DNA from: Octopus bimaculoides
Lineage: Eukaryota
Length of the DNA: 51,176 nucleotides
NCBI RefSeq assembly: GCF_001194135.2
Contig: NC_068982.1
Coordinates: 188,948,334-188,999,509 of the forward strand
Direction: 5' to 3'
Shown here: positions 6,949 through 51,075 of the stretch, one piece after another
How positions within the stretch are numbered: the stretch's first letter is position 1
Layout of the letters: each line of letters opens with the position of its first letter
Made by a program: the position numbers and the translations under genes
Notes under the pieces: model-generated
Databases searched by the model: none
What the model was told of the DNA's origin: nothing
Seen by the model: the letters and a program-made list of their open reading frames with translations, nothing else

Positions 6949-7290
6949 ATGTTATGGCTGGTCATAGAATGACCATTAGTTTTGCACCTATAAAGCGTTT
7001 AGCAGTATAGGCGACACGTCAGACTCAAATGGCTGAAGGCGCATAACCTCTCTACAAGTGGAGGAAGAAATACGTCACGGTCAGTTAGATTTGTAAACAT
7101 GAAATATTTGTGCACTCCTGCGGTGACAAATATTTTTTTGTTTACAAAACTGACTGACCGTGACGTATTTCTTCCTCCAATTGTAGAGACGTTATGCGCC
7201 TTAGGTCGTTTGAATCTCACGAATCATCTATATTGCGAAGTGCTTTATAGGTGGCGAAACCAATGGTCACTCTATGATTAGCCATAGCAT
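6949..7290. mobile_element. Foldback or long-TIR palindrome (about 165 bp arms, 7-nt loop)
   Basis: The two halves are reverse complements; they even give mirror ORFs (LTDRDVFLPP) on opposite strands. Centre: tgtgcac-tcctgcg-gtgaca. Confidence 0.85.
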
Positions 7291-7878: not shown

Positions 7879-8131
7879 TAAGAAACTTGCTTCTCAACCA
7901 CATGACTCTGGGTTCACTCCCACTGCGTAACACCTTGGGCAAGTGACTAATACTATAGTATTGAGAGTGGACTTGAGAGACGGAAATTGAAAGAAGCCCA
8001 TCGTTTATTGGCATTCTTATGATTGTGCATTCCCCCACCTTCTGGGGTAGACTCATTCAAGAAAAACATTCATCAAGGCAGTGCTCCAGCATGGCTACAG
8101 TGTAATGAGCGAAACAAATAAAAGATAAAAG
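7879..8131 (+). mobile_element. SINE family B, internally deleted
   Basis: Head cttgcttctcaaccacatgactctgggttcactcccactgcg and tail gtgctccagcatggctacag...gaaacaaataaaag. Confidence 0.8.
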
Positions 8132-8132
8132 A

Positions 8133-8411
8133 CTTTATCTCTTCCTCACAAGTCTTGTCGAGCTCCTGGAGTCTTGCATATGCAGCGGGCTTCCTACCTG
8201 CAGCCTATGGTACCATGCTATCCATTCTTCTCAGCTCCCTAATACTTTCCTGGTTATTCTGGCCATGCCAAGGAGGGAAACCTTTTGTAACAGTTCTACT
8301 GGGCACTCTATTCCAATTTCCTTTATATTCCCCTTAATGCCTTCTGATACTGTCCCCAAAGACCCAACAATAATTGGCACTATCTTCACATTCTTCATTT
8401 TCCATAGCTCG
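8133..8411 (-). mobile_element. R4/Dong-like LINE 3' end, 5'-truncated
   Basis: Minus-strand translation LWKMKNVKIVPIIVGSLGTVSEGIKGNIKEIGIECPVELLQKVSLLGMARITRKVL is typical of the RLE C-terminus; homologous to 45330-45600 and 48845-49135. Confidence 0.8.
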
Positions 8412-9177
8412 ATATTATTATTGATAGTAGTAGTATTATTATGGTCAAGTTAGTTTGTTGCTGCTCTGAGTTTTGCCTGTGTGTGCACAGGAGTTTACAG
8501 ACAAGTTTCAACGGAATAAATGACGGAATTTGTACATTTATATATAGGATTCCTGCCATAGAGTATGAAGGAAATGGAGAGAAAGGGGGGAAGAGAAAAG
8601 ATATAAGAGGCAAGAGAGATTAGGGGAAAACAAAAAAAAATGATAGATAGATAGATTTCTTTTATTAGCCACACAGGGCTTTACACAGAGGGGACAAATA
8701 CAATGTAGAGCATTTCTTTTTGGGAGGGGGAAGGAGAGAAGATAGATAGATAGATAGATAAATAGATATGAGTGTAGACATGCGTGTATGTAGCCACAAA
8801 AAGAGAGAGAGGGTGTATATAAATAAATAACCGAGTGTTCGACGACAATCACAACAAACGAGAAATAAATACATAACAGAATAGATTCGATTAGATATAT
8901 TGATAATATATCGATAGGGAAACTATCCATTAATGCACATATCAAACATATGGCGACAAGTATTTGCATATTTGCACATCAAAGAATGCTGTTGTTTTAT
9001 TGGTTGCATCACACTTGGTACTCTCCATGCATTTAGACGAGGTCGTTTGACGGTAACACGTGCATTCGATGCACAAGCATATATGTGCATCGATTCAGGT
9101 ATGTATACGTGCATTTCTGTACATACGTGTGTGTGTGTATGTGTGTGTGAGGTATGTGCATAATAAATTTATGTATA

Positions 9178-17839: not shown

Positions 17840-18200
17840 GGCGTAGGAGTGGCTGTGTGGTAAATAGCTTGCTTACCAACCACATGATTCCAGGTTCTGT
17901 CCCACTGCGTAGCACCTTGGGCAAGTGTCTTCTATAGCCTCGGGCCAACCAAAGCCTTGTGAGTGGATTTGGTAGACGGAAACTGAAAGAAGCCTGTCGT
18001 GTGTGTCTTCCCAACATTGCTTGACAATGGGTGTTGGGGTTTTTATGTCCCTCGTAACTTAGTGGTTCGGCAAAAGGGACCGATAGAACAAGTAGCAGGC
18101 TGTAAAATCAAGTACCGGGGTCGATTCATTCGACTAAATATTCATCAAGGCGGTGCCCCAGCATGGCCGCAGTCTAATGACTAAAACAAGTAAACAATAA
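17840..18200 (+). mobile_element. SINE family B, near full length
   Basis: ggcgtaggagtggctgtgtggtaa head through the gtgccccagcatggccgcagtctaatgact tail. Confidence 0.9.
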
Positions 18201-22456: not shown

Positions 22457-22477
22457 ATAATTATTTTTATTGCAGTC

Positions 22478-23129
22478 TTCTAGCGGACGTGATCTGGGCA
22501 TTACTGTAAACAACGATTGGACAAACCACATTTCTAAGATTGTCAAGAAGGCTGACGGTGTCCTAGCATCACTCAGTAAGACCTTTGTCGTCCGTTCTCC
22601 AGCTACCCATTTAAAACTGTATACGACAATGGTACGTCCACACTTGGAATTTGCATCAACAATCTGGAACCCCTATCTTGCTCAGCATATAAATCTCCTG
22701 GAAGCTGTTCAGAAATGTGCAACAAAACGAATACCTGCCGTCAGGCATCTACCACACTCTGGACGTCTTGTTTCTCTGGGCATGGATACCATTGAAGCTC
22801 AGACGTCTAGCAAGTCACTTGGTAGACATCCACAAGATTATCCACCATCTTTCCAAAAACATTGGGCACTTTTTTGAATTCCATGACAAACACTCGCCGA
22901 CATGCTCATAAAATTAAAAAAACAACACAGCACCCATGACTTTCGGAAACATTTTTTCATGTTCAGAATTGCTGAAGCATGAAAAACTACCCGTATCAGT
23001 CTTTAGCTGTCGAGACACTACATCCTTCAAAATTTCCATGTTTCCTGAAATCTGCCAACGGTACACCTGATGGCCCCTTTTGTTTTCTTTCAGTTCTAGT
23101 GCACCTGAGCACTATATACAACAATTTCC
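22478..23129 (+). mobile_element. CR1-group LINE 3' end (RT C-terminus and 3' UTR), decayed
   Basis: RDLGITVNNDWTNHISKIVKKA...LYTTMVRPHLEFASTIWNPYL...LEAVQKCATK, then HKIKKQ...RKHFFMFRI, are standard CR1/L2-group post-RT motifs. The tail continues at 24171-24190 after a nested insertion. Confidence 0.88.
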
Positions 23130-24170
23130 GGATCTATTCCATCTCGATAACAGATCTTTTAATTAATCTTTTTTAACTAAACAGTTTAAAACTTCGAATA
23201 ACTGGTAGAATTTCTCATGTAGAACACAGTTAACTCTGAATGTTTTTGAGAAAATTTGGTATTTTAGAAGATATTTTGTGTTAAAGTCGTATTTGGGTAA
23301 TTTCAACCAATCAATGACGTGCATTCGGTTGAAGAAAGCTACTGCTGTTTGCAATAGTAATCGAAGAGGAACAACTTCCGAGTCATCTCTACTAAATGTC
23401 ACCACTCTGTTCTAGCCGTATGGCGAGCGAAGACGATGCCGCCTTTATCTTTTCTTCCTTTATAGTCAGCACCATGCATTCCTTACTCTTTCCCTCCCTT
23501 CTACACCATCAACTAGCAACCAGCAAGCAAACTTGTCACTGTCACTACAATTACCATATTTTCCAGTGTATAAGCCACTATTTGTTTTGTTTTACCTTCA
23601 TGCTTTGATTATGTTATTTTGTATCTAATAAAGACTTCTATATTAATGAAATGTATCTGTTGTTGCTTATAGTAAGATAAAATCATGACAATAACAAAAC
23701 AACTGATAGTTGTAAAATAAATCATTTTGAAACTACATATTCGTCAACAAGAAAAAAGCTAGCTGCGGACTCGTTGCTCTGTAGGTCTTTTAAACACCGG
23801 CGCACTTTATGTGTGGATAAAAAACACTGATGTGGGGCAAACGAATAAATATATGTAAATAATATTTCTTCCTTCTTGGTGTTGATTCTTCGAACAAAGT
23901 AGTGACATTTAGCAGAGATGACCCGGAAGTTGTTCCTCCTCGATTACTATCGTAAACAGCAATAGCTGTCTTCAACCAAATACACGTCGTTGATTGGTTG
24001 AAATTACCCAAATACGACAACACGAAATAACTTCTAAAATACGAAATTTTCTCAAAAATGTTCAGAGCAAACTGTGTTCTATGTGAGAAATTCTACCAGT
24101 ATTCGAGGTTTCAAACTGTTTAGTTAAAACAAATTAATTAAAACATCTATGATTGAGATGGAATACGTCC
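23130..24170. mobile_element. Non-autonomous DNA transposon with about 280-bp TIRs
   Basis: 23130-23411 is the reverse complement of 23892-24170; termini GGA...TCC; 8-bp TSD caatttcc/caatttcg (7 of 8). Confidence 0.85.
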
Positions 24171-24249
24171 CAATTTCGTTTATTATATTATTTTGATATA
24201 TATGTGTGCGCACGTATATACATACGTACATATTACACTCGTACACAGA

Positions 24250-29235: not shown

Positions 29236-29301
29236 GTTCTCTGTGGCTTAACGTTTCGTGGACCCAAAGGACGAACCCATCTCATCAGATATTAAGAGAA
29301 C
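29236..29301 (-). ncRNA. Type I hammerhead-like motif (canonical core)
   Basis: Minus strand: guucucu-uaauau-CUGAUGA-GA-UGGGUUC(gucc uuu)GGGUCCA-C-GAA-ACGU-U-aagccac-agagaac. Distal stem I is 7 bp; proximal stem I is weak. Confidence 0.5.
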
Positions 29302-30059: not shown

Positions 30060-31090
30060 TGGTTTCCTTTCATTATAACTTTATTTCAGCTGCCTTAGTA
30101 CTGGGCATCCTCCGGAGGCCAAGAGTAACAAGAGCACCACATGTATTCCATTTTAGATGCAGAGTGCTTTCCGTAGTATATGGGCTGTAACCATAGAGAT
30201 TGGAGTTATCTTTTGTAGTTCATATTGAATTGGAGTTACCACAGAGTTGCTTAATATACTTCTCAGCTCCCTTCTTTTAAGCTTCCACATTATTTATATT
30301 TGACGGATATTTGTCCTCATCTTGTTTGTTGTTAAGACAACGTTTCGGCTGATATACCCTCCAGCCTTCATCAGGTGTCTTGGGGAAATTTAGAACCTGG
30401 GTTCTCATTCCTAAGGTATTTTTCAATGTTATTATTATTATTATTCAGGTCACTGCCTGGAATCAAACTCGGAATCTTGGGGTTAGTAGTCCGTGTTCTT
30501 AACCACTACGTCATATGCCCATTCGATTCCAGGCAGTGACCTGAATAATAATAATAATAATAACATTGAAAAATACCTTAGGAATGAGAACCCAGGTTCA
30601 AAATTTCCTCAAGACACCCGATGAAGGCTGGGGGGGGGGGATATATCAGCCAAAACGTCTTAAGAACAAACAAGATGAGGACAAATATCCGTCAAATGTA
30701 AATAGCGTAAATAATGTACATAATTCCTCATCTCTTAAATATAGAACTGTATTAAGCTTCCACATTTTTGTGCTTTCAATTTGCAGATCTTTTCGTATTC
30801 CTTTCTTGAGACATTTTGATCTTGTGGGGGCAGACATATCTATTAAGAGACAAGTTCCACTGCTGTAGTCCTTGATCACAATGTCTGGTCAATTGGAGTC
30901 AATTTTTCTGTCTCTTTGTATTGAGAAGTTCCAAAGGATGGTGACACACTCGCCATCTACTACATCCTCTGGATGGTGCCTGTTTCACTTATCATGAGAT
31001 TTAATTTTGTAATATTTACAAGCATTGCAGGGGCTGTACTGCCCTAGTCTGTCATGTCTGATGAGGAACTTCTTTTCAGCAAGGATTGAG
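30060..31090 (-). mobile_element. R4/Dong-like LINE 3' end (RLE domain), interrupted by the HHR-SINE
   Basis: VTILWNFSIQRDRKIDSN*PDIVIKDYSSGTCLLIDMSAP...DLQIESTKMWKL (31090-30752) continues left of the insertion as KGAEKYIKQL...ELQKIT...TAHILRKALCI*. Confidence 0.82.
30292..30751. mobile_element. tRNA-headed hammerhead SINE, inverted duplication, copy 1
   Basis: Left arm (minus) has the full tRNA-like head ending at 30520; right arm (plus) starts at the B box; HHR motifs at 30334-30379 and 30613-30662; perfect 15-bp TSD ttaagcttccacatt at 30277-30291 and 30752-30766. Confidence 0.9.
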
Positions 31091-34540: not shown

Positions 34541-34900
34541 GGTGCAGGAGTGGCTGTGTGGAAAGTAGCTTGCTTACCAACCACATGGTTCCGGGTTCAG
34601 TCATGCCACCTTGGATAAGTGTCTTCTACTATAGTCTCGGGCCGACCAAAGCCTTGTGAGTGGATTTGGTAGAAGGAAACTGAAAGAAGCCCGTCATGTA
34701 TGTATGTATGTATGTCTCCACCATCGCTTGACAACTGATGCTGGTGTGTCTACATCTCCGTAACTTAGCAGTATGGCAAAAGGACTGCCAATAGAATAAG
34801 TACCAGGTTTGCAAAGAATAAGTCCTGGGGTCGATTTCTTCGACTAAAAAGGTGGTGCTCCAGCATGGCCACAGTCAAATGACTGAAACAAATAAAAGAA
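34541..34900 (+). mobile_element. SINE family B, full length
   Basis: ggtgcaggagtggctgtgtgg head to gactgaaacaaataaaagaa tail. Confidence 0.92.
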
Positions 34901-35759: not shown

Positions 35760-35999
35760 ATTGAGAATATTTGAAAATGTTATTCACAATGATTGGAAAC
35801 TGTTGAAAGTGCTTTCTCTCCAATCTCTCAACCCATTCTCGCATTGAATGCATCCATCCTTGTCTGAACACCGAAATCAAACAATATTGAACCTTAGCAA
35901 TTAAATGGGTGATCACTTGAGAGGTATAAGCTTTATAAGCATCACCTTTTCTTTGACGAGTTGTAGCACACCTGAGCACTGTGTACAATAAACTCATTA
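35760..35999 (+). mobile_element. Degenerate CR1-like 3' end
   Basis: Tail cacctgagcactgtgtacaataa matches the CR1 tail at 23102-23125; NVIHNDWKLL...SLNPF resembles the RVIxxWNxLP...SLxxF motif. Confidence 0.45.
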
Positions 36000-36455
36000 C
36001 AGTTCTATATTTAAGAGACAAGGAATTATATACATTATTTACATTTGACAGATATTTGTTCTCATCTTGTTTGTTGTTAACACAACGTTTCGGCTGATAT
36101 ACTCTCCAGCCTTCATCAGGTGTCTTGGGGAAATTTTGAACCTGGGTTCTCATTCCTAAGGTATTTATCAATGTTATTATTACTATTATTATTATTATTC
36201 AGGTCACTGCCTGGAATCGAACTCGGAATCTTGGGGTTAGTAGCCCGCGCTACTAACCCCAAGATTCCGAGTTCGATTCCAAGCAGTGACATGAATAATA
36301 ATAATAATAACATAAAAAATACCTTAGAAATAAGAACCCAGGTTCTAAATTTCCCCAAGACACCTGATGAAGGCTGGAGGGTATATCAGCTGAAACGTTG
36401 TGTTAACAACAAACAAGATGAGGACAAATATCCATCTAATGTAAATAATGTAAAT
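36000..36455. mobile_element. tRNA-headed hammerhead SINE, inverted duplication, copy 2
   Basis: Long near-perfect hairpin with a 4-nt loop ccgc (36245-36248); HHRs at 36079-36124 (minus) and 36359-36404 (plus); perfect 13-bp TSD aataaactcatta at 35987-35999 and 36456-36468. Confidence 0.92.
36079..36124 (-). ncRNA. Minimal type I hammerhead ribozyme motif (best-preserved copy)
   Basis: GACAC-CUGAUGA-A-GGCUG(GAGAGUAUAU)CAGCC-GAA-ACGU-U-GUGUU: 5-bp stem I, 5-bp stem II, palindromic ACGU stem III, UH cleavage site. Confidence 0.8.
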
Positions 36456-36532
36456 AATAAACTCATTATATAATTTTTTATTATTATTGTTATTATTGAG
36501 AGTCACTGCCTGGTATTGAGGCAATACCAAGC

Positions 36533-37345
36533 TCTGATGGCTTCTAAACTTAACTGATTGGAAGTGTTATCATATACATGTTTTGTCTTGGTGTAAAAGA
36601 TCCGCTTGTCAGTCGTTTGACCTTAACCAGTTGAGCATGTCCCTTAGGAGCTGACGATATGTGCATCTCTGATCCTGAGCAGAAGTAATTGGAGAGCATC
36701 ATAGTCAAGTGTTGAAAGGAATTCTTTAGGGTTTGAATAATTCACCTCTGGAATTGTAGTTGTGAGCCCCATGCCAGTAGCGTGTAAAAAGCACCATCTG
36801 AACATGGTCGATGCCAGTGTTGCTTTGACTGGTTTCCATGCTGGTGACACATAAAAAGCGCACTATCCAATTATGGTTGATGCCAGCTCCACTGGCCTCT
36901 ATGCCGGTGGCACGTAAAAAGCACCCACTACACTCTTGGAGTGGTTGGTGTTAGGAAGGGCATCCAGCTGTAGAAACACTGCCAGATCAGATTGGGGCCT
37001 GGTGCAGCCTCCTGGCTTCTCAGACCCCAGCTGAACCGTCCAACCCATGCCAGCATGGTAAACAGACGTTAAACGATGATGATGATGATGAAACATGGAT
37101 GTTCCATTCATTACCCTTAAAAAATCATTAAGGAATCTTTTGAGGGAGATAGAATTTTCTTCAAGTTGAGTAGCGTAACTGGGCCCCACCTGCAAGGTCA
37201 TGTGCTGTTTATCTTGATATGAGGTCACCATATAGTTGTGATGCATGTGCCTGGTGGAGCCTTATCGGACAGGTGACATGATGGGTATATTGGGCTTCAT
37301 ATATTTCCATGCCCGCATCACTTTATGACATGCCTTGCTCTCTCA
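36533..37345. mobile_element. Repeat family F split by a family E SINE (36765-37092)
   Basis: F breaks at cacctctggaa and resumes at aacatggatg, collinear with the intact junction at 28843-28865. Confidence 0.7.
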
Positions 37346-39235: not shown

Positions 39236-39612
39236 TATAGCTGTGTGGTAAGTAGCTTGCTTCCCAACCACATGGTTCCGGGTTCAGTCCCACTGCGTGG
39301 CACTTCGGGCCCACCAAAGCCTTGTGAGTGGATTTGGTAGACGGAAACTGAAAGAAGCCAGTCGGGCGTGTGTGCTTGTCCCCACCCCACCACCACCGCT
39401 CGACAACTAATGTTGGTGTGTTTACATCCCCGTAACTTAGCGGTTCGGCAAAACGAACTCGATAGAATAATACCAGGCTTTACCCCCCCAAAAAAAAAAA
39501 TAATAAATAATAATAATAACAAATACTGGGATCGATTCATTTGGCTAAAAATTCTTCAAGGCAGTGCCCCAGCATGGCCGCAATTTAATGACTGAAACAA
39601 GTAAAAGATCAA
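39236..39612 (+). mobile_element. SINE family B
   Basis: gctgtgtggtaagtagcttgcttcccaaccacatgg head and B tail. Confidence 0.9.
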
Positions 39613-45314: not shown

Positions 45315-46498
45315 ATTTATTTACTCTTATTTTCTCTTTATCACAGGTTTTGTTGGAACTCGTGGAGTCTAGCATGCTTAACGGGCTTACTACCTGCAGC
45401 CTATGGTACCATGCTATCCGTTCTTTTCAGCTATCTAATACTTTCCTGGTTATTCTGGTCGTGCCAAGGAGGCAAACCTTTTGTAACTCTATTCCAGTTT
45501 CCTTTATATTCCTCTTGATGTTTTCTGATATTGTTCCCAAGGACCCAACAATAAATGGCACTATCTTCACATTCTTCATTTTCCATAGCCAGGCTTTCGT
45601 ACTTAGGATAGTTCAATCTGTCTATCTTTTCGCCTTCTTTCTTGACTATTCGTGGGTCAAAGCGACACACATCATCAACCATATAGCATATGTGGTGCGC
45701 CTTGTCCACCACCACTAAGTCCGGTCCGTAATGCTCTAACACTTGAACTGTTTGGATTGGGAAATCCCAGAGGATTTTGCTAGTGTCTGACTCTGCCACT
45801 CTCTGCGGTTTGTGCTCATACCATGTCTTGCCTCTTTCTAACCCTCACTTTTCACACAATTTCCAATGTAGCACTTTCACTACCTGATCATGTTGCCACA
45901 AATTGTAGTGGATTGGGGCAAGTCTAGGGCATTCTTTTGTGATACGGTCAATGGTTTCATCCACTCTATTGCAGATGCGGCACAGCGGAGACACTTGCTC
46001 ATTCCTAAGGTTGACCCTCCAGTTCGTAGCCAGAGCTGGGTCTTCTGCTGCCAGTATAGTGCTCTCGGCCTCTTCTTTTAGTGTTCCTTTCTTTACCCAA
46101 TCCCACCTATTTTTTCCAGCAACTTCTGTTGTGACTTCATGGAATTCATTGTGTAGTCCCTTGTTGCGTAATACTTTTTCATGTCCTTTTTGTACTTCTT
46201 CCTTTGTTTTTCCTTTTTTCTCTGCTCTCAATACTCCCTCATTCCTAACTGTCACTAGCAAGGTTTCCTTACTTTAGGCTCGGTATCTCATTAAGCTCTC
46301 GAGTTGGATACACACAGTTTTCCACACTTATCAGTCCCCTTCTTCCATTCGCTCTCTTCATGTATAAGCGATCAGTGTCAGCACATGGATGATGGCCTCC
46401 ATGCATCACATTGATAGGAGCTTTCTTGACTTCCTCTCCATCTCCTTTGGATCCTTCTCTGACCACTTCAGGATTCCATTGCCATACCGAACTACTGC
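45315..46498 (-). mobile_element. R4/Dong-like non-LTR retrotransposon, 5'-truncated and frameshifted
   Basis: GGHHPCADTDRLYMKRANGRRGL (post-RT), CRICNRVDETIDRITKEC (CCHC knuckle with a decayed His), QHDQVV, and ILWDFPIQT...PDLVVVDK...KEGEKI (PD-(D/E)xK RLE). Confidence 0.9.
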
Positions 46499-46566: not shown

Positions 46567-47183
46567 GTCATTATTATTATTATTATACACATGTATCATG
46601 ACTCTGATTGAGTAAAGCAATGCTAATAGCCAGTTGTTGGAACTTATCTTTTAGGGTAAAGCATTTGGCAAGTACAGAGCATAATGTCAATTAAGAATAA
46701 CAAAAGAACAGGAGATACGTAATCATCTTCATTGGCTTACAGCTGTTTCTGCTCTAACATGCAGTGCACTCATCAGAGCTGAGTGCTTGTGCAACATCCT
46801 ATAGCAGAAGCTCCTGTAAACTAATGAAGGCGACTACATGACTCCTGTTCCCTTGGCTTTCGTTAATGTGTATAAACACATACATGCATATATATCAAAA
46901 CAGAAGATTGGAAAACTTCTTGGTATAATATTTTCACCATTACACATATTTCATTTGCTAATAGGAGTCACAAAATTGTACATGTTGGATAAACATGTAA
47001 GATATATCCTATTAGAAATTCCTCACAGAGAATGAAATAATATTTTTGCATTATTTTCAACTCTTATGCATACCTCACACAAATGTAACATCTACATATG
47101 AATCTGAAATGCTGAAATAAGCAGATGTGCTTCAAGAGGACACAGCATGAATTTTAACCTTGTCTACATTATATATATATATG

Positions 47184-48640: not shown

Positions 48641-48844
48641 ATATCTATATCTATATCTATACATACACACAAACACACAATACCATACAGGATGTACATT
48701 GTACATTGAATATACAGAACGCTCCCCTTAAGTATCTCTTTCAACCTTATTCTTATTATCTTTTCCGGTGTCCTACTATTCGTGTCACCTTTTATAAGCA
48801 AGACATTCTTGCTGTCCCACCACTCCACTGTTCAAGATTTAGTA

Positions 48845-49135
48845 TTTATTATTTTCTCTTTATCACAGGTTTTGTTGGAGCTCCTGGAGTCTTGCATGCT
48901 TAACGGACTTCCTACCTCCAGCCTATGGTACCATGCTATCCATTCTTCTCAGCTCTCTAATACTTTCCAGATTATTCTGGCCATGCCAAGGAAGCAAACC
49001 TTTTGTAACAATCCCACTGGACACTCTATTCCAATTTCCTTTATATTCCTCTTGATGCCTTCTGATACTGTCCCCCAAGGACCCAACAATAATTGTCACT
49101 TTCTTCACCCTCTTCATTTTCCATAGCCGGGCTAT
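48845..49135 (-). mobile_element. R4/Dong-like LINE 3' end
   Basis: Highly similar to 8133-8411 and 45330-45600. Confidence 0.82.
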
Positions 49136-49753
49136 TTTGTACTCACTCTCTCCATCAAATCAACATTGTTGAAAAGGTGCACAGGTGTGCCACATGTCAG
49201 GTGTCGCAGTGACTGTAGAGCAGCGTGAGATGAAGGGTTTTGCTCAAGAACACAATGCACCACCTGGTCTAAGAAACGAAACCACAATTTTGCGATAGTG
49301 AGTCCAACACCCTAACCCCTAGGCCATGTGCCCTCACACACACACACACACACACACACATGTTACAAGAGAAGAGATGCTGTATAAGACATCTGAAATA
49401 TATAATCCAAAGCTGAATTAGTAATAGATTATTGCACTCCAACAAGGTACAACATTGCAGTAAATCCAGGTAGAAATAGCTTCCATATATATATATAATT
49501 GGCTAAAACGATCGCTATGAGTAACATATATTTAGAATATAAGCAGAAATGCAGAAATTTCACAGATGGTTTATAATTTAATCTTTCAACAGCTGTTTCA
49601 TTAGGAGTAAACATCATTATTTCTAGAATTAAGTAATTAAGATACATAGTTAATAGAAATCATTAATTAATATACATCCATATAGTATAACTATCTTAAA
49701 TTAAATCAACTTCAACTAAACTTTATTTAAACCATCAGGAATATTGCAGCCTA

Positions 49754-49901
49754 CATTATTTACCTTATTTACATTCGGTGGATATTTGTCCTCATCTTGT
49801 TTGTTGTTAACACAACATTTCGGTTGATATACCCTCCGGCCTTCATCAGGTGTCTTGGGGAAATTTCAAACCTGGCAGTGACCTGAATGATAATAATAAT
49901 A

Positions 49902-49962
<61 letters not shown>

Positions 49963-50189
49963 TAACAACAACAAGAACAACAACAATAATAACAATATTG
50001 AAAAATACCTTAGGAATGAGAACTCAGGTTCGAAATTTCCCCAAGACACCTGATGATGGCTTGGAGGGTATATCAGCCGAAATGTTGTGTTAACAACAAA
50101 CAAGATGAGGACAAATATCCGTCAAATGTAAATAATGTAAATAATGTAAATAATGTACATAATTCCTTGTCTCTTAAATATAGAACTGT
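49754..50189. mobile_element. tRNA-headed hammerhead SINE, inverted duplication, copy 3
   Basis: HHR motifs at 49809-49854 (minus) and 50045-50091 (plus); junction aacctgg|cagtgacc at 49875/49876; degenerate 13-bp TSD atattgcagccta/atattacaagcta. Confidence 0.85.
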
Positions 50190-51075
50190 ATATTACAAGC
50201 TATCCTAATCATAGACCATCACTGGTTTAAATACCATGTGTGTGTGAGTGTGTGTGTGTTTGTGTGTGTGTGTGCATACATACCTACATGCATACATACA
50301 TATATATACATACATACACATATTTGATACCATCTGGGTAATAACCTTATAATATGCATTTCAAAGCTCCTGTACTGTTATTGGCTACCATATGCTATCA
50401 CACTGCAGGATTACCCCTTTTACTAGATATATATGTGGAAATCTGTTAATGTACACAGAATTCTTTGAAAAATTAAAAAAACAAATCATAAATGGAACAG
50501 GCTTTAATCACAAATCACAACAATTGTTTCTGAACATTAGTAACATCTATTAATTGCTGAGTTTTCCATATCATACCATTACATAAAATATTGTATAAAT
50601 AAATATGATCCAGCAGTAGCTGTGTACTGGCACATCATCAGGTGAGTGGCTTTGACAGAAACTGGATCATAATTAATTATAGAAGATTATATGGAAAACT
50701 CGGCAACAACTATAACCAATGCACAGAAACAATTATTGTGATTACGATTAAAGGCTGTTCATTCCATCTCTATAAATTTTTATACATACACACATATATA
50801 TGCACACATACATGTTTACATACATATATACGTATATACATACCTACATACAAACTCACACACACAAACAAACACACATACATGCAATTTATTTTTATAG
50901 AGTGTATTTCAAAGAGCATAACATAAAAAAGATTTTAAACTCCATGTTTCCCATAACACTCCGGAACTAATGTCTAGGAAGAACATTCATTTTACAAAAG
51001 ATAATACCACATTAATTATGTACAGGACAGGAGAATTGAAGTGTTAAACACGATTAGGCTTTATATATATATATG

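What the first reader, a model, noticed from the sequence alone, without database searches (positions are those of the whole stretch)
35987..36468. All three HHR-SINE copies are head-to-head inverted duplications with TSDs but different junctions
Seen in sequence: each insertion is a minus arm followed by a plus arm, bounded by one TSD (15 bp perfect, 13 bp perfect, 13 bp degenerate). In every case one arm reaches the true 3' end (AGAACTGT). The other arm stops inside the TAAATAATG repeats, overlapping the TSD by microhomology (acatt in copy 1, aat in copy 2). The central junctions differ: 30520/30521, a snap-back at gttagtagc-ccgc-gctactaac (36245-36248), and 49875/49876. So the palindrome is made anew at each insertion rather than being the master element. 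In copy 1 the arm with the short 3' end contains head sequence absent from the other arm, so simple cDNA fold-back cannot explain it. Inference: both target ends primed reverse transcription on two RNA templates, which ACGU-mediated HHR dimerisation could hold together. This would link ribozyme dimer formation to the integration mechanism.
Basis: partly seen in the sequence, partly recalled or inferred. Interest (0 to 1): 0.85.

Follow-up and report, generated by a model that had tools for sequence, protein, structure and literature searches.

The report
Penelope-type inverted insertions of octopus SINE
Three copies of a small ribozyme-carrying repeat in an octopus genome each sit as a head-to-head inverted pair inside one target duplication. 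This is real, but it is the known insertion footprint of Penelope-like retrotransposons, not a new ribozyme-driven mechanism.

Summary
The window is Octopus bimaculoides. It holds three copies of a ~279-nt SINE with tRNA-like A/B boxes, an internal (AAT)n and a minimal type-I hammerhead. Each copy is a minus arm abutting a plus arm. The flanking TSDs are 15/15, 13/13 and 10/13. The inner junctions differ: consensus 1|54, 26|32 and 124|61. In each pair one arm ends at AGAACTGTA and the other ends 33-43 nt short. Arms within a pair differ by 6-7.5%, so they are not assembly duplicates. Thirteen copies of another SINE family in the window are all single.

Together these features are the published signature of Penelope-like element (PLE) insertion: an inverted 5'-truncated copy, one TSD, a 30-40-bp "tail" at one end only, junction palindromes and a min-HHR. 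A PLE protein cleaves and extends both target strands in vitro.

The hammerhead-dimer link is not supported. PLE clades without hammerheads make the same inverted insertions, and hammerhead catalytic mutants insert normally in vitro.

I file this as a new member of a known kind. A genome-wide census and identification of the PLE partner could not be done with the collections at hand.

The parts
30277..30291 (.). Copy 1 left TSD, TTAAGCTTCCACATT
   Evidence: (D1) and 53: 15/15 match to 30752-30766. Only 1 of 2000 random flank pairs scored as well.
30287..30520 (-). Copy 1 minus arm, consensus 1-237. It is essentially full length at the head and has the short 3' end, overlapping the TSD by ACATT.
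   Evidence: 230 matches, 4 mismatches. The A box TGACGTAGTGG starts at cons 9, so cons 1-2 correspond to tRNA position 1 (my reading of the sequence). An intact HHR core lies at 30342-30374(-).
30522..30751 (+). Copy 1 plus arm, consensus 54-279, 5'-truncated. It carries the ~34-nt 3' extension ('tail', about 30718-30751). Its HHR is decayed (CCGATGA, a G11 run at 30630-30640, CAAAAC).
   Evidence: Base 30521 (C) is assigned to neither arm.
30752..30766 (.). Copy 1 right TSD
35987..35999 (.). Copy 2 left TSD, AATAAACTCATTA
   Evidence: (D2) and 53: 13/13 match; 0 of 2000 random pairs scored as well.
36000..36250 (-). Copy 2 minus arm, consensus about 26-279, with the tail (about 36000-36032). 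HHR core at 36087-36119(-).
36245..36248 (.). Copy 2 junction: the 4-nt loop ccgc of a near-perfect palindrome. The arms overlap by 2-3 nt (GCG).
   Evidence: I2: 61-nt arms, 97% complementary, 4 nt between them.
36249..36458 (+). Copy 2 plus arm, consensus 32-244. It has the short 3' end, overlapping the TSD by AAT. HHR core at 36364-36396(+).
36456..36468 (.). Copy 2 right TSD
49741..49753 (.). Copy 3 left degenerate TSD, ATATTGCAGCCTA
   Evidence: 10/13 match; 78 of 2000 random pairs scored as well.
49752..49875 (-). Copy 3 minus arm, consensus 124-247, with the short 3' end. The HHR core has GAAAT in place of GAAAC.
49871..50190 (+). Copy 3 plus arm, consensus 61-279, with the tail (about 50157-50190). 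The internal (AAT)n is expanded to about 110 nt (49886-49996). The junction with the minus arm falls on a CCTGG/CCAGG microhomology at 49871-49875.
   Evidence: (D1).
50190..50202 (.). Copy 3 right degenerate TSD, ATATTACAAGCTA

Best explanation
The repeat is a non-autonomous, SINE-like retroelement of Octopus bimaculoides. It has a pol III-type head with tRNA A/B boxes, an internal (AAT)n, and a 3' module with a minimal Penelope-type hammerhead.

I propose that it is copied into the genome by the reverse transcriptase/GIY-YIG endonuclease of a Penelope-like element (PLE). The proposed steps are:
1. The PLE enzyme makes staggered nicks 13-15 bp apart in AT-rich DNA.
2. Both freed 3' ends prime reverse transcription of uncleaved element RNA.
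3. Each cDNA starts at one of two alternative internal start sites about 35 nt apart. These give the short end in the GTAAATAAT repeats and the long end ...AGAACTGTA; the long end corresponds to the PLE 'tail'.
4. Each cDNA stops at a variable 5' position.
5. The two antisense cDNAs are joined head to head through a few bases of microhomology or a snap-back, and are then filled in.

The product is an inverted pair inside one TSD, with a junction unique to each event.

Shown by the sequence: the architecture, the TSDs, the end asymmetry, the distinct junctions, and the hammerhead core and helices.
Taken from the literature: this architecture is typical of PLEs, and a PLE protein extends both strands from two start sites.
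Inferred: that an octopus PLE is the mobiliser, and that two separate cDNAs rather than one made each pair.
For: 1. The architecture matches published PLE insertions point by point.
- An inverted pLTR or 5'-truncated copy, with the whole unit in one TSD of 8-10 bp.
- A 31-bp or 30-40-bp tail at only one of the inverted ends.
- Palindromes at the inverted junction (PMC3846280; PMC8557442).
- In the window the long-minus-short end difference is 32-42 nt, and exactly one arm per pair carries the extension in 3 of 3 copies.

2. The short ends cluster at cons 237, 244 and 247, within 10 nt. This points to a defined start site rather than random joining.

3. In vitro, the Anolis PLE protein cleaves and extends both top and bottom strands. 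It starts reverse transcription at two adjacent internal sites that delimit the tail, it prefers ATT in AT-rich DNA, and it uses unprocessed RNA (PMC11167929). In the window, the c1 and c2 TSDs end in CATT(A).

4. The hammerhead fits the PLE min-HHR description (PMC4209133).
- It has the CUGAUGA and GAAA cores.
- Helix I is 5 bp (GACAC/GUGUU).
- Helix II is 6 bp with an unpaired A at its 5' side.
- It has no helix III, only the palindrome ACGU.
- Helices I and II appear in the MFE fold.
- Three exact CTGATGA(N10-40)GAAAC cores fall in the arms. The loose motif matched 5 times in the window against 0.34 expected by chance.
- That paper also reports pairs of min-HHRs 100-700 bp apart on opposite strands.

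5. No inner junction lies at the hammerhead cleavage site (after cons 185). The templates were therefore uncleaved.

6. Copy 1 needs two independent cDNAs, because each arm has sequence that the other lacks.

7. The pairing is specific to this family. Three of 3 HHR-SINE copies are abutting inverted pairs, against 0 of 13 copies of another SINE family in the same window. By my own arithmetic, Fisher's exact P = 1/560.

8. Arms of a pair differ by 6.4-7.5%, the same as arms of different copies (4.6-13.1%). They are old, independently decaying sequences and not duplicated reads.

9. Octopus genomes carry Penelope and Naiad PLEs.
Against: - No autonomous octopus PLE with a matching pLTR, hammerhead or N-terminus could be retrieved. 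The peptide search from the AUG of CUGAUGA found nothing, I recognised no PLE motif among the window's ORF translations (read by eye), and no further octopus DNA was reachable.
- The sample is three copies from one 51-kb window, so the genome-wide fraction of inverted pairs is unknown.
- The direct partial tandems (pLTRs) that PLEs often form are absent here.
- The in vitro study reports start sites that are not homologous to the nicked DNA, whereas these short ends show 2-5 nt of microhomology.
- The TSDs of 13-15 bp are longer than the 8-10 bp quoted for the rotifer PLEs.
- Copies 2 and 3 can equally be made by snap-back of a single cDNA.
Confidence: 0.72

Rival explanations
1. Two element RNAs are held together by hammerhead dimerisation through the ACGU palindrome. 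Each RNA is reverse-transcribed from one target end, so ribozyme dimer formation is part of the integration mechanism.
For: - The hammerhead has no helix III and carries the self-complementary ACGU. Such minimal motifs are thought to act as dimers (PMC4209133).
- Copy 1 needs two cDNAs.
- At one site (alignment column 166) the arms of c1 and of c2 carry different bases, T/A and A/T. This could mean different templates.
Against: - Naiad and Chlamys PLEs form the same tandem/inverted insertions but lack canonical hammerheads.
- Hammerhead catalytic mutants do not alter insertion in vitro.
- The PLE protein is itself predicted to dimerise, which offers a protein route to two-ended priming.
- Almost all arm differences are singletons in a star-like pattern. 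No subfamily-diagnostic difference between the arms of a pair can be shown.
- A 4-bp RNA helix is weak, and the computed dimer MFE is a different extended duplex.
Confidence: 0.08
2. One cDNA per event. The first-strand cDNA snaps back on itself (self-priming) and copies itself, giving the second arm. The far end is then joined to the target by microhomology.
For: - Copy 2 has a near-perfect hairpin junction with a 4-nt loop (I2).
- In copies 2 and 3 the shorter arm is a subset of the longer one.
- The short ends overlap the TSD by 2-5 nt.
- Self-priming was proposed for PLE junction palindromes (PMC3846280).
Against: - In copy 1 each arm contains sequence absent from the other: cons 1-53 versus 238-279.
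- Random microhomology joining would not place all three short ends within 10 nt of each other.
Confidence: 0.15
3. The palindromes are assembly artefacts, or copies of palindromic master elements, or pairs of independent insertions.
For: - The scaffold is a gapped short-read assembly with 8 N runs.
- Published work notes that PLE tandem/inverted structures cause trouble in short-read assemblies.
Against: - Arms differ at 6-7.5% of sites, so they are not duplicated reads.
- No gap lies within 1 kb of any copy.
- Perfect 15- and 13-bp TSDs bound the whole units, with no internal TSD. This excludes two independent insertions.
- The three junctions are different, which excludes a single palindromic master.
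- 0 of 13 control SINE copies are paired.
Confidence: 0.04
4. A LINE mobilises the SINE, and the inversions arise by L1-style twin priming.
For: - Octopus is rich in LINEs, and LINE fragments lie in the window.
- Short tandem repeats near a 3' end occur in some LINE/SINE tails (my own knowledge).
Against: - As I recall it, twin priming yields two complementary, essentially non-overlapping parts of one RNA. Here the arms duplicate 114-213 nt of the same sequence.
- Nothing else in the window shares the 3' module.
- The one-sided ~35-nt extension and the min-HHR are PLE traits.
Confidence: 0.05

Closest known systems
Penelope-like element (PLE) insertion architecture (Penelope/Poseidon, Neptune, Naiad; Arkhipova et al. 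2013 PMC3846280; Craig et al. 2021 PMC8557442; Frangieh et al. 2024 PMC11167929)
   Same: - A head-to-head inverted 5'-truncated copy.
- One TSD around the whole unit.
- A 30-40-bp tail at only one end.
- Palindrome or microhomology at the inverted junction.
- A min-HHR just upstream of the 3' end, with the AUG of CUGAUGA 85-127 nt from the ends. In the Anolis PLE the corresponding distance is 111-118 nt into the ORF.
   Different: - No ORF: the element is ~279 nt with a tRNA-like pol III head and an internal (AAT)n.
- No direct partial tandem (pLTR) in these three copies.
- TSDs are 13-15 bp.
- The short ends show microhomology to the target.
Sm-alpha / Sj-alpha hammerhead-bearing SINE-like elements of schistosomes (Ferbeyre 1998 is cited in PMC4209133; the SINE-like nature, the pol III boxes and the Laha 2000 Sj-alpha report are from my own knowledge)
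   Same: A short interspersed retroelement that combines pol III promoter boxes with a type-I hammerhead, in an invertebrate genome that also carries PLEs.
   Different: - Sm-alpha carries a canonical type-I hammerhead with loop-loop contacts and a short helix III. The octopus element has the minimal, helix-III-less form.
- I know of no report that Sm-alpha inserts as inverted pairs.
- No sequence similarity was tested.
Animal non-LTR retrozymes (Cervera & de la Pena 2020 PMC7229834; Li et al. 2026 preprint 10.64898/2026.07.22.740005)
   Same: Non-autonomous hammerhead-bearing repeats, now argued to derive from PLE pLTRs and to use PLE machinery.
   Different: Retrozymes are head-to-tail tandem arrays that yield circRNAs after double cleavage. 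Here there is no tandem, the two hammerheads are on opposite strands, and the cDNAs ran through the cleavage site.
L1 twin priming (Ostertag & Kazazian 2001; my own knowledge)
   Same: Both target 3' ends prime reverse transcription, producing an inversion within one TSD and microhomology at the internal junction.
   Different: Twin priming inverts one part of a single copy. Here the two arms are duplicates of the same segment, each with its own 3' start site.

Membership tests
PLE-type insertion / PLE-dependent non-autonomous element | An inverted 5'-truncated copy abuts the 5' end, and the whole unit is bounded by one TSD | tested here: met
   Seen in 3 of 3 copies. The TSDs are 15/15, 13/13 and 10/13.
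PLE-type insertion / PLE-dependent non-autonomous element | An optional 30-40-bp 'tail' present at only one end of the unit | tested here: met
   The long end is at cons 279 and the short ends are at cons 237, 244 and 247, a difference of 32-42 nt. Exactly one tailed arm per pair in 3 of 3 copies.
PLE-type insertion / PLE-dependent non-autonomous element | Variable junctions with palindromes or microhomology at the inverted junction | tested here: met
   c2 has a 4-nt-loop palindrome. c3 has a CCTGG/CCAGG overlap at 49871-49875. c1 has at most 1-2 nt of filler.
PLE-type insertion / PLE-dependent non-autonomous element | The 3' module is homologous to the pLTR/ORF start of an autonomous PLE in the same genome | not testable with these tools
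   No octopus PLE sequence was reachable. The peptide search from the hammerhead AUG found no candidate. Reading the window's ORF translations by eye, I recognised no PLE motif.
PLE-type insertion / PLE-dependent non-autonomous element | AT-rich target with nicking at ATT | tested here: inconclusive
   The c1 and c2 TSDs end in CATT(A) and the c3 TSD starts with ATATT. With n=3 there is no statistic.
PLE-type insertion / PLE-dependent non-autonomous element | Direct partial tandem (pseudo-LTR); frequent in PLEs but not obligatory | tested here: not met
   No head-to-tail duplication appears in any of the three copies.
Minimal dimeric type-I hammerhead of PLEs (min-HHR) | Conserved core CUGAUGA ... 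GAAA | tested here: met
   The core is exact in 3 arms. The other three arms have 1-2 point changes.
Minimal dimeric type-I hammerhead of PLEs (min-HHR) | Short helix I (4-5 bp); long helix II with an unpaired base at its 5' side; no helix III, only a palindrome | tested here: met
   Helix I is GACAC/GUGUU. Helix II is GGCUGG/UCAGCC, preceded by an unpaired A. GAAACGUU contains ACGU. Helices I and II appear in the MFE fold. The descriptor is from PMC4209133.
Minimal dimeric type-I hammerhead of PLEs (min-HHR) | Self-cleavage (as a dimer) | not testable with these tools
   This needs in vitro transcription of dimeric constructs.
Canonical hammerhead families of Rfam | A match to an Rfam hammerhead covariance model | tested here: not met
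   No hit at gathering score over the window and none at E<=10 over copy 1. The only hits were hairpin-driven sub-threshold miRNA-precursor matches.
SINE2 / tRNA-derived SINE | Pol III A and B boxes at tRNA-like spacing at the 5' end | tested here: met
   Read from the consensus. TGACGTAGTGG versus TRGCNNAGTGG matches at 10 of 11 positions, at cons 9-19. AGTTCGATTCC versus GGTTCGANNCC matches at 10 of 11 positions, at about cons 50-60.
SINE2 / tRNA-derived SINE | A recognisable tRNA cloverleaf | tested here: not met
   ARAGORN finds no tRNA in the window, and there was no Rfam tRNA hit at E<=10.
L1-type twin-priming inversion | The two arms are complementary, non-duplicated parts of one copy | tested here: not met
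   The arms overlap by 184 (c1), 213 (c2) and 124 (c3) consensus positions.
Non-LTR retrozyme | Head-to-tail tandem units, each with a hammerhead | tested here: not met
   The window holds only inverted pairs and no tandem copies.

The most novel reading that the evidence does not exclude
The helix-III-less hammerhead of PLE-type elements serves mainly as an RNA-RNA dimer linkage through its ACGU palindrome. This linkage would deliver two templates to a dimeric PLE enzyme, so that both nicked target strands are extended at once. Inverted pairs would then be the direct product of ribozyme dimerisation rather than of protein dimerisation or snap-back.
Probability: 0.07. Interest if true: 0.75.

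Novelty: new member of a known kind. Interest (0 to 1): 0.35.

Why it matters
Full-length PLE insertions are several kilobases long and assemble badly. That is one reason why their unusual integration pathway is still unresolved. A ~280-nt element that shows the complete PLE footprint in under 500 bp could serve as a natural reporter. The footprint comprises both 3' start sites, both 5' stops, the junction and the TSD. A census of thousands of such copies in long-read octopus assemblies could measure three things:
- how often both strands prime;
- how the two start sites are chosen;
- whether the two arms come from one RNA or two.

It would also assign part of the very large octopus SINE load to PLE rather than LINE machinery.

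As a speculative side effect, each insertion is a ready-made ~120-250-bp hairpin. Hairpins of this kind feed dsRNA pathways such as editing and small-RNA production.

Tried and rejected
1. More copies from public DNA.
- Pattern scans with a SINE-specific 24-mer found nothing in metagenome, prokaryote-genome and viral contigs.
- Scans with the hammerhead core also found nothing, apart from four metagenome loci that share only 22-25 nt and are not the SINE.

2. More octopus DNA via proteins.
- The sense-frame peptide hit only two octopus proteins.
- One of them has a gene range above 100 kb, so no DNA was returned. The other is not on record.
- A LINE ORF from the window returned only hits of 57% identity or less, none attributable to octopus.
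- All three protein searches are now used.

3. PLE partner.
- When padded, it found no candidate.
- I recognised no PLE motif by eye among the window's ORF translations. I did not run a Pfam scan.

4. Rfam found no hammerhead and ARAGORN found no tRNA.

5. Test of one versus two templates. Six arms give a star-like pattern dominated by singletons, so the test has no power.

6. I looked for an older SINE copy under the copy 2 target. Only a 42-nt head fragment to the right of it is significant.

7. The thermodynamic dimer fold does not recover the hammerhead dimer. It is uninformative for a tertiary-structure-dependent ribozyme.
Full report
**What is there**

The window is a gapped eukaryotic scaffold with 8 N runs. 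A peptide translated from the repeat matches two Octopus bimaculoides proteins. One of them lies on assembly GCA_001194135.2, so the source is O. bimaculoides or a very close relative.

I aligned the six repeat arms and derived a 279-nt consensus from them. Its parts, in order, are:
- A head with pol III A- and B-box matches: TGACGTAGTGG at cons 9-19 and AGTTCGATTCC near cons 50-60.
- An internal (AAT)n.
- A body with CUGAUGA-A-GGCUGG...UCAGCC-GAAACGUU|GUGUU.
- Two to four GTAAATAAT repeats.
- A terminal ACATAATTCCTTGTCTCTTAAATATAGAACTGT(A).

A blastn search of this consensus finds only six arms in the window, i.e. three copies, plus one 42-nt head fragment at 36478-36519(-).

**Check of the observation**

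Each copy is a minus arm followed by a plus arm. On the consensus the arms cover:
- c1: cons 1-237 and 54-279.
- c2: about cons 26-279 and 32-244.
- c3: cons 124-247 and 61-279.

The inner junctions therefore differ. In c1 the two arms are separated by a single unassigned base, 30521. In c2 there is a 61-nt, 97% complementary palindrome with the 4-nt loop ccgc at 36245-36248. In c3 the junction is at 49875/49876, on a CCTGG/CCAGG overlap.

I compared the TSDs with 2000 random pairs of positions from the same window:
- c1: 15/15; 1 of 2000 random pairs scored as well.
- c2: 13/13; 0 of 2000.
- c3: 10/13; 78 of 2000, so marginal.

In every pair one arm ends at ...AGAACTGT(A). The other stops in the GTAAATAAT repeats at cons 237, 244 or 247 and overlaps the TSD by 5, 3 or about 2 nt.

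**Are the palindromes real?**

- Arms of one pair differ at 6.4-7.5% of aligned body positions. This is no less than arms of different copies, which differ by 4.6-13.1%. They are old sequences that have decayed independently. They are not a duplication of the same reads, and they have not been homogenised.
- No assembly gap lies within 1 kb of a copy.
- A second, more abundant SINE family has 13 heads in the window and never occurs as an abutting inverted pair. That is 3 of 3 against 0 of 13. By my arithmetic, Fisher's exact P is 1/560.
- The pairing is thus a property of this family and not of the assembly. Only long reads can settle this fully.

**What it is**

The hammerhead is not found by Rfam at any threshold tried. 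It does fit the 'min-HHR' that Cervera and de la Pena described in the pseudo-LTRs of Penelope-like elements (PMC4209133):
- It has the conserved cores.
- Helix I is short, 5 bp.
- Helix II is longer, 6 bp, with an unpaired base at its 5' side.
- There is no helix III, only a palindrome (ACGU) that could pair between two molecules.

Helices I and II appear in the MFE fold. The loose motif CTGATGA(N10-40)GAAAC occurs 5 times in the window against 0.34 expected, and three of these are SINE arms.

More important, the insertion architecture is the published PLE hallmark:
- In the rotifer PLEs, an ORF with pLTRs is completed by an adjacent inverted pLTR.
- The whole unit is flanked by an 8-10-bp TSD.
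- Palindromes are common at the inverted junction (PMC3846280).

Craig et al. summarise the same picture for all endonuclease-bearing PLEs. [quoted passage not shown] In the window, the long-minus-short difference is 32-42 nt, and exactly one arm per pair carries the extension. Cervera and de la Pena also noted pairs of min-HHRs 100-700 bp apart on opposite strands.

Octopus genomes contain Penelope and Naiad PLEs.

I therefore read the element as a tRNA-headed, non-autonomous passenger of a PLE. Its 3' module corresponds to a PLE pLTR/ORF-start region. The AUG inside CUGAUGA lies 85-95 nt from the short ends and 127 nt from the long end. In the Anolis PLE the ORF starts at the hammerhead and reverse transcription starts 111-118 nt into it.

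**How it most likely works**

Frangieh et al. purified an Anolis PLE protein (PMC11167929). They found that:
- It cleaves and extends both strands of the target, unlike R2 or L1.
- It initiates at two adjacent internal sites whose spacing is the tail.
- It prefers ATT in AT-rich DNA.
- It uses unprocessed RNA.
- It is predicted to be a dimer.

Applied to these copies, the model runs as follows:
1. Staggered nicks 13-15 bp apart free two 3' ends.
2. Each end primes a cDNA at the short or the long start site.
3. Each cDNA stops at a variable 5' position. In c1, one cDNA reaches the RNA 5' end.
4. The two antisense cDNAs are joined head to head by a few bases of pairing. Examples are the CC-GG overlap in c3 and GCG in c2, where the quasi-palindromic tRNA-like anticodon-stem region lies.

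Two further observations fit this model:
- None of the junctions is at the hammerhead cleavage site (after cons 185). The templates were therefore uncleaved, as in vitro.
- The three short ends cluster within 10 nt, which argues for a defined start site rather than random end joining.

Copy 1 is decisive against a pure snap-back. Its minus arm alone has cons 1-53 and its plus arm alone has cons 238-279, so neither arm can be a copy of the other. Copies 2 and 3 are compatible with both snap-back and two cDNAs. Both routes may operate, and Arkhipova et al. proposed self-priming to explain the junction palindromes.

The insertion-time origin, the rejection of a palindromic master and the two-ended priming are supported. 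In fact they restate what is known or proposed for PLEs.

It is not supported:
- PLE clades without canonical hammerheads (Naiad, most Chlamys) make the same tandem/inverted insertions and proliferate well.
- Hammerhead catalytic mutants insert normally in vitro. These mutants do not test pairing through helix III.
- Protein dimerisation is an available alternative.
- The six arms form a star-like set dominated by singleton changes. The proposed test, different subfamily variants in the two arms, has no power here.

**Limits**

- I could not obtain further octopus sequence.
- I could not obtain an octopus PLE (no PLE motif recognised by eye among the window's ORF translations).
- The PLE partner and the genome-wide fraction of inverted pairs therefore remain untested. 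The conclusion rests on three copies plus the literature.

**Verdict**

This is a new member of a known kind: a PLE-type insertion footprint on a hammerhead-bearing SINE in octopus. Its value is as a compact natural reporter of PLE integration. The ribozyme-dimer mechanism remains an untested speculation with published evidence against its necessity.

Noticed in passing
window 36478-36537: Ten bases to the right of the copy 2 TSD lies a 42-nt fragment in minus orientation. It matches consensus 54-95 (T-loop-like box, CAGTGAC, (AAT)n) and has no hammerhead body; 0 of 200 shuffles scored as well. It ends in a small palindrome of its own: TCACTGCCTGGTATTG-agg-CAATACCAAGCTCTGA, 36503-36537, 81% complementary. 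It may be an older, heavily truncated inverted insertion or a related head-only element.
   Followed up: partly
window 29253-29288 (-): A second hammerhead-like motif from an unrelated repeat: CTGATGA-G-[A]-TGGGT...GTCCAC-GAAACGTT. It again has a bulged base in helix II and the ACGU palindrome. It is single and lies about 1 kb upstream of copy 1. Its body shows no similarity to the SINE consensus apart from an AAT run. A weaker CTGATGA...GAAAC match is at 46745-46776(-).
   Followed up: partly
protein P0002 (O. bimaculoides dystrobrevin beta isoform X1, GCA_001194135.2): The first ~33 residues of this annotated 94-aa isoform (GEGWRVYQPKCCVNNKQDEDKYPS) are the sense-frame translation of the SINE's hammerhead and 3' region. 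The SINE has therefore been exonised, or mis-annotated, in a host gene model. UniProt A0A0L8FV75_OCTBM (51 aa) is entirely SINE-derived.
   Followed up: partly
window 49886-49996: In the plus arm of copy 3 the SINE's internal (AAT)n has expanded to about 110 nt and drifts into AAC/AAG variants. The same tract is 18-30 nt in the other arms. (AAT)n tracts are also frequent elsewhere in the window. Rotifer PLEs were reported to pick up and to target (AAT)n-type N-rich segments.
   Followed up: no
window 30630-30640: There is a G11 homopolymer inside loop 2 of the decayed hammerhead in the plus arm of copy 1, where the consensus has GGAGGG. It could be a real expansion or a short-read homopolymer error.
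   Followed up: no
window 7871-47229 (13 sites, e.g. 34546-34600, 17845-17897, 39240-39287): A different, abundant SINE family has the head AGGAGTGGCTGTGTGGAAAGTAGCTTGCTTACCAACCACATGGTTCCGGGTTCAG. Its 13 copies are all single-armed, and the closest opposite-strand heads are 690-1054 bp apart. I used it as a within-window control.
   Followed up: yes
window 6985-7253; 23113-24187; 734-2028: Other long inverted repeats without hammerhead motifs: 120-nt arms with a 29-nt spacer (MITE-like); about 300-nt arms with a 479-nt centre; and 174-nt arms 947 nt apart. They were not classified.
   Followed up: no
window 30397-30595: The Rfam E-value search gives sub-threshold hits to miRNA-precursor families across the copy 1 palindrome: MIR7533 at 85 bits against a gathering score of 230, and mir-344. 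These reflect the long hairpin only. They do show that a transcript through a pair would fold into a long dsRNA hairpin.
   Followed up: no
window 22461-22874 (+); 45434-46273 (-); antisense relatives at 8109-8450 and 48710-49123: There are LINE ORF2 fragments (RT thumb region and a C-terminal zinc-knuckle region). The best database relatives of the 45434-46273 ORF are only 57% identical or less, are unnamed and come from ENA/JGI/Logan contigs. The octopus LINEs themselves are thus not in the searchable protein set.
   Followed up: partly
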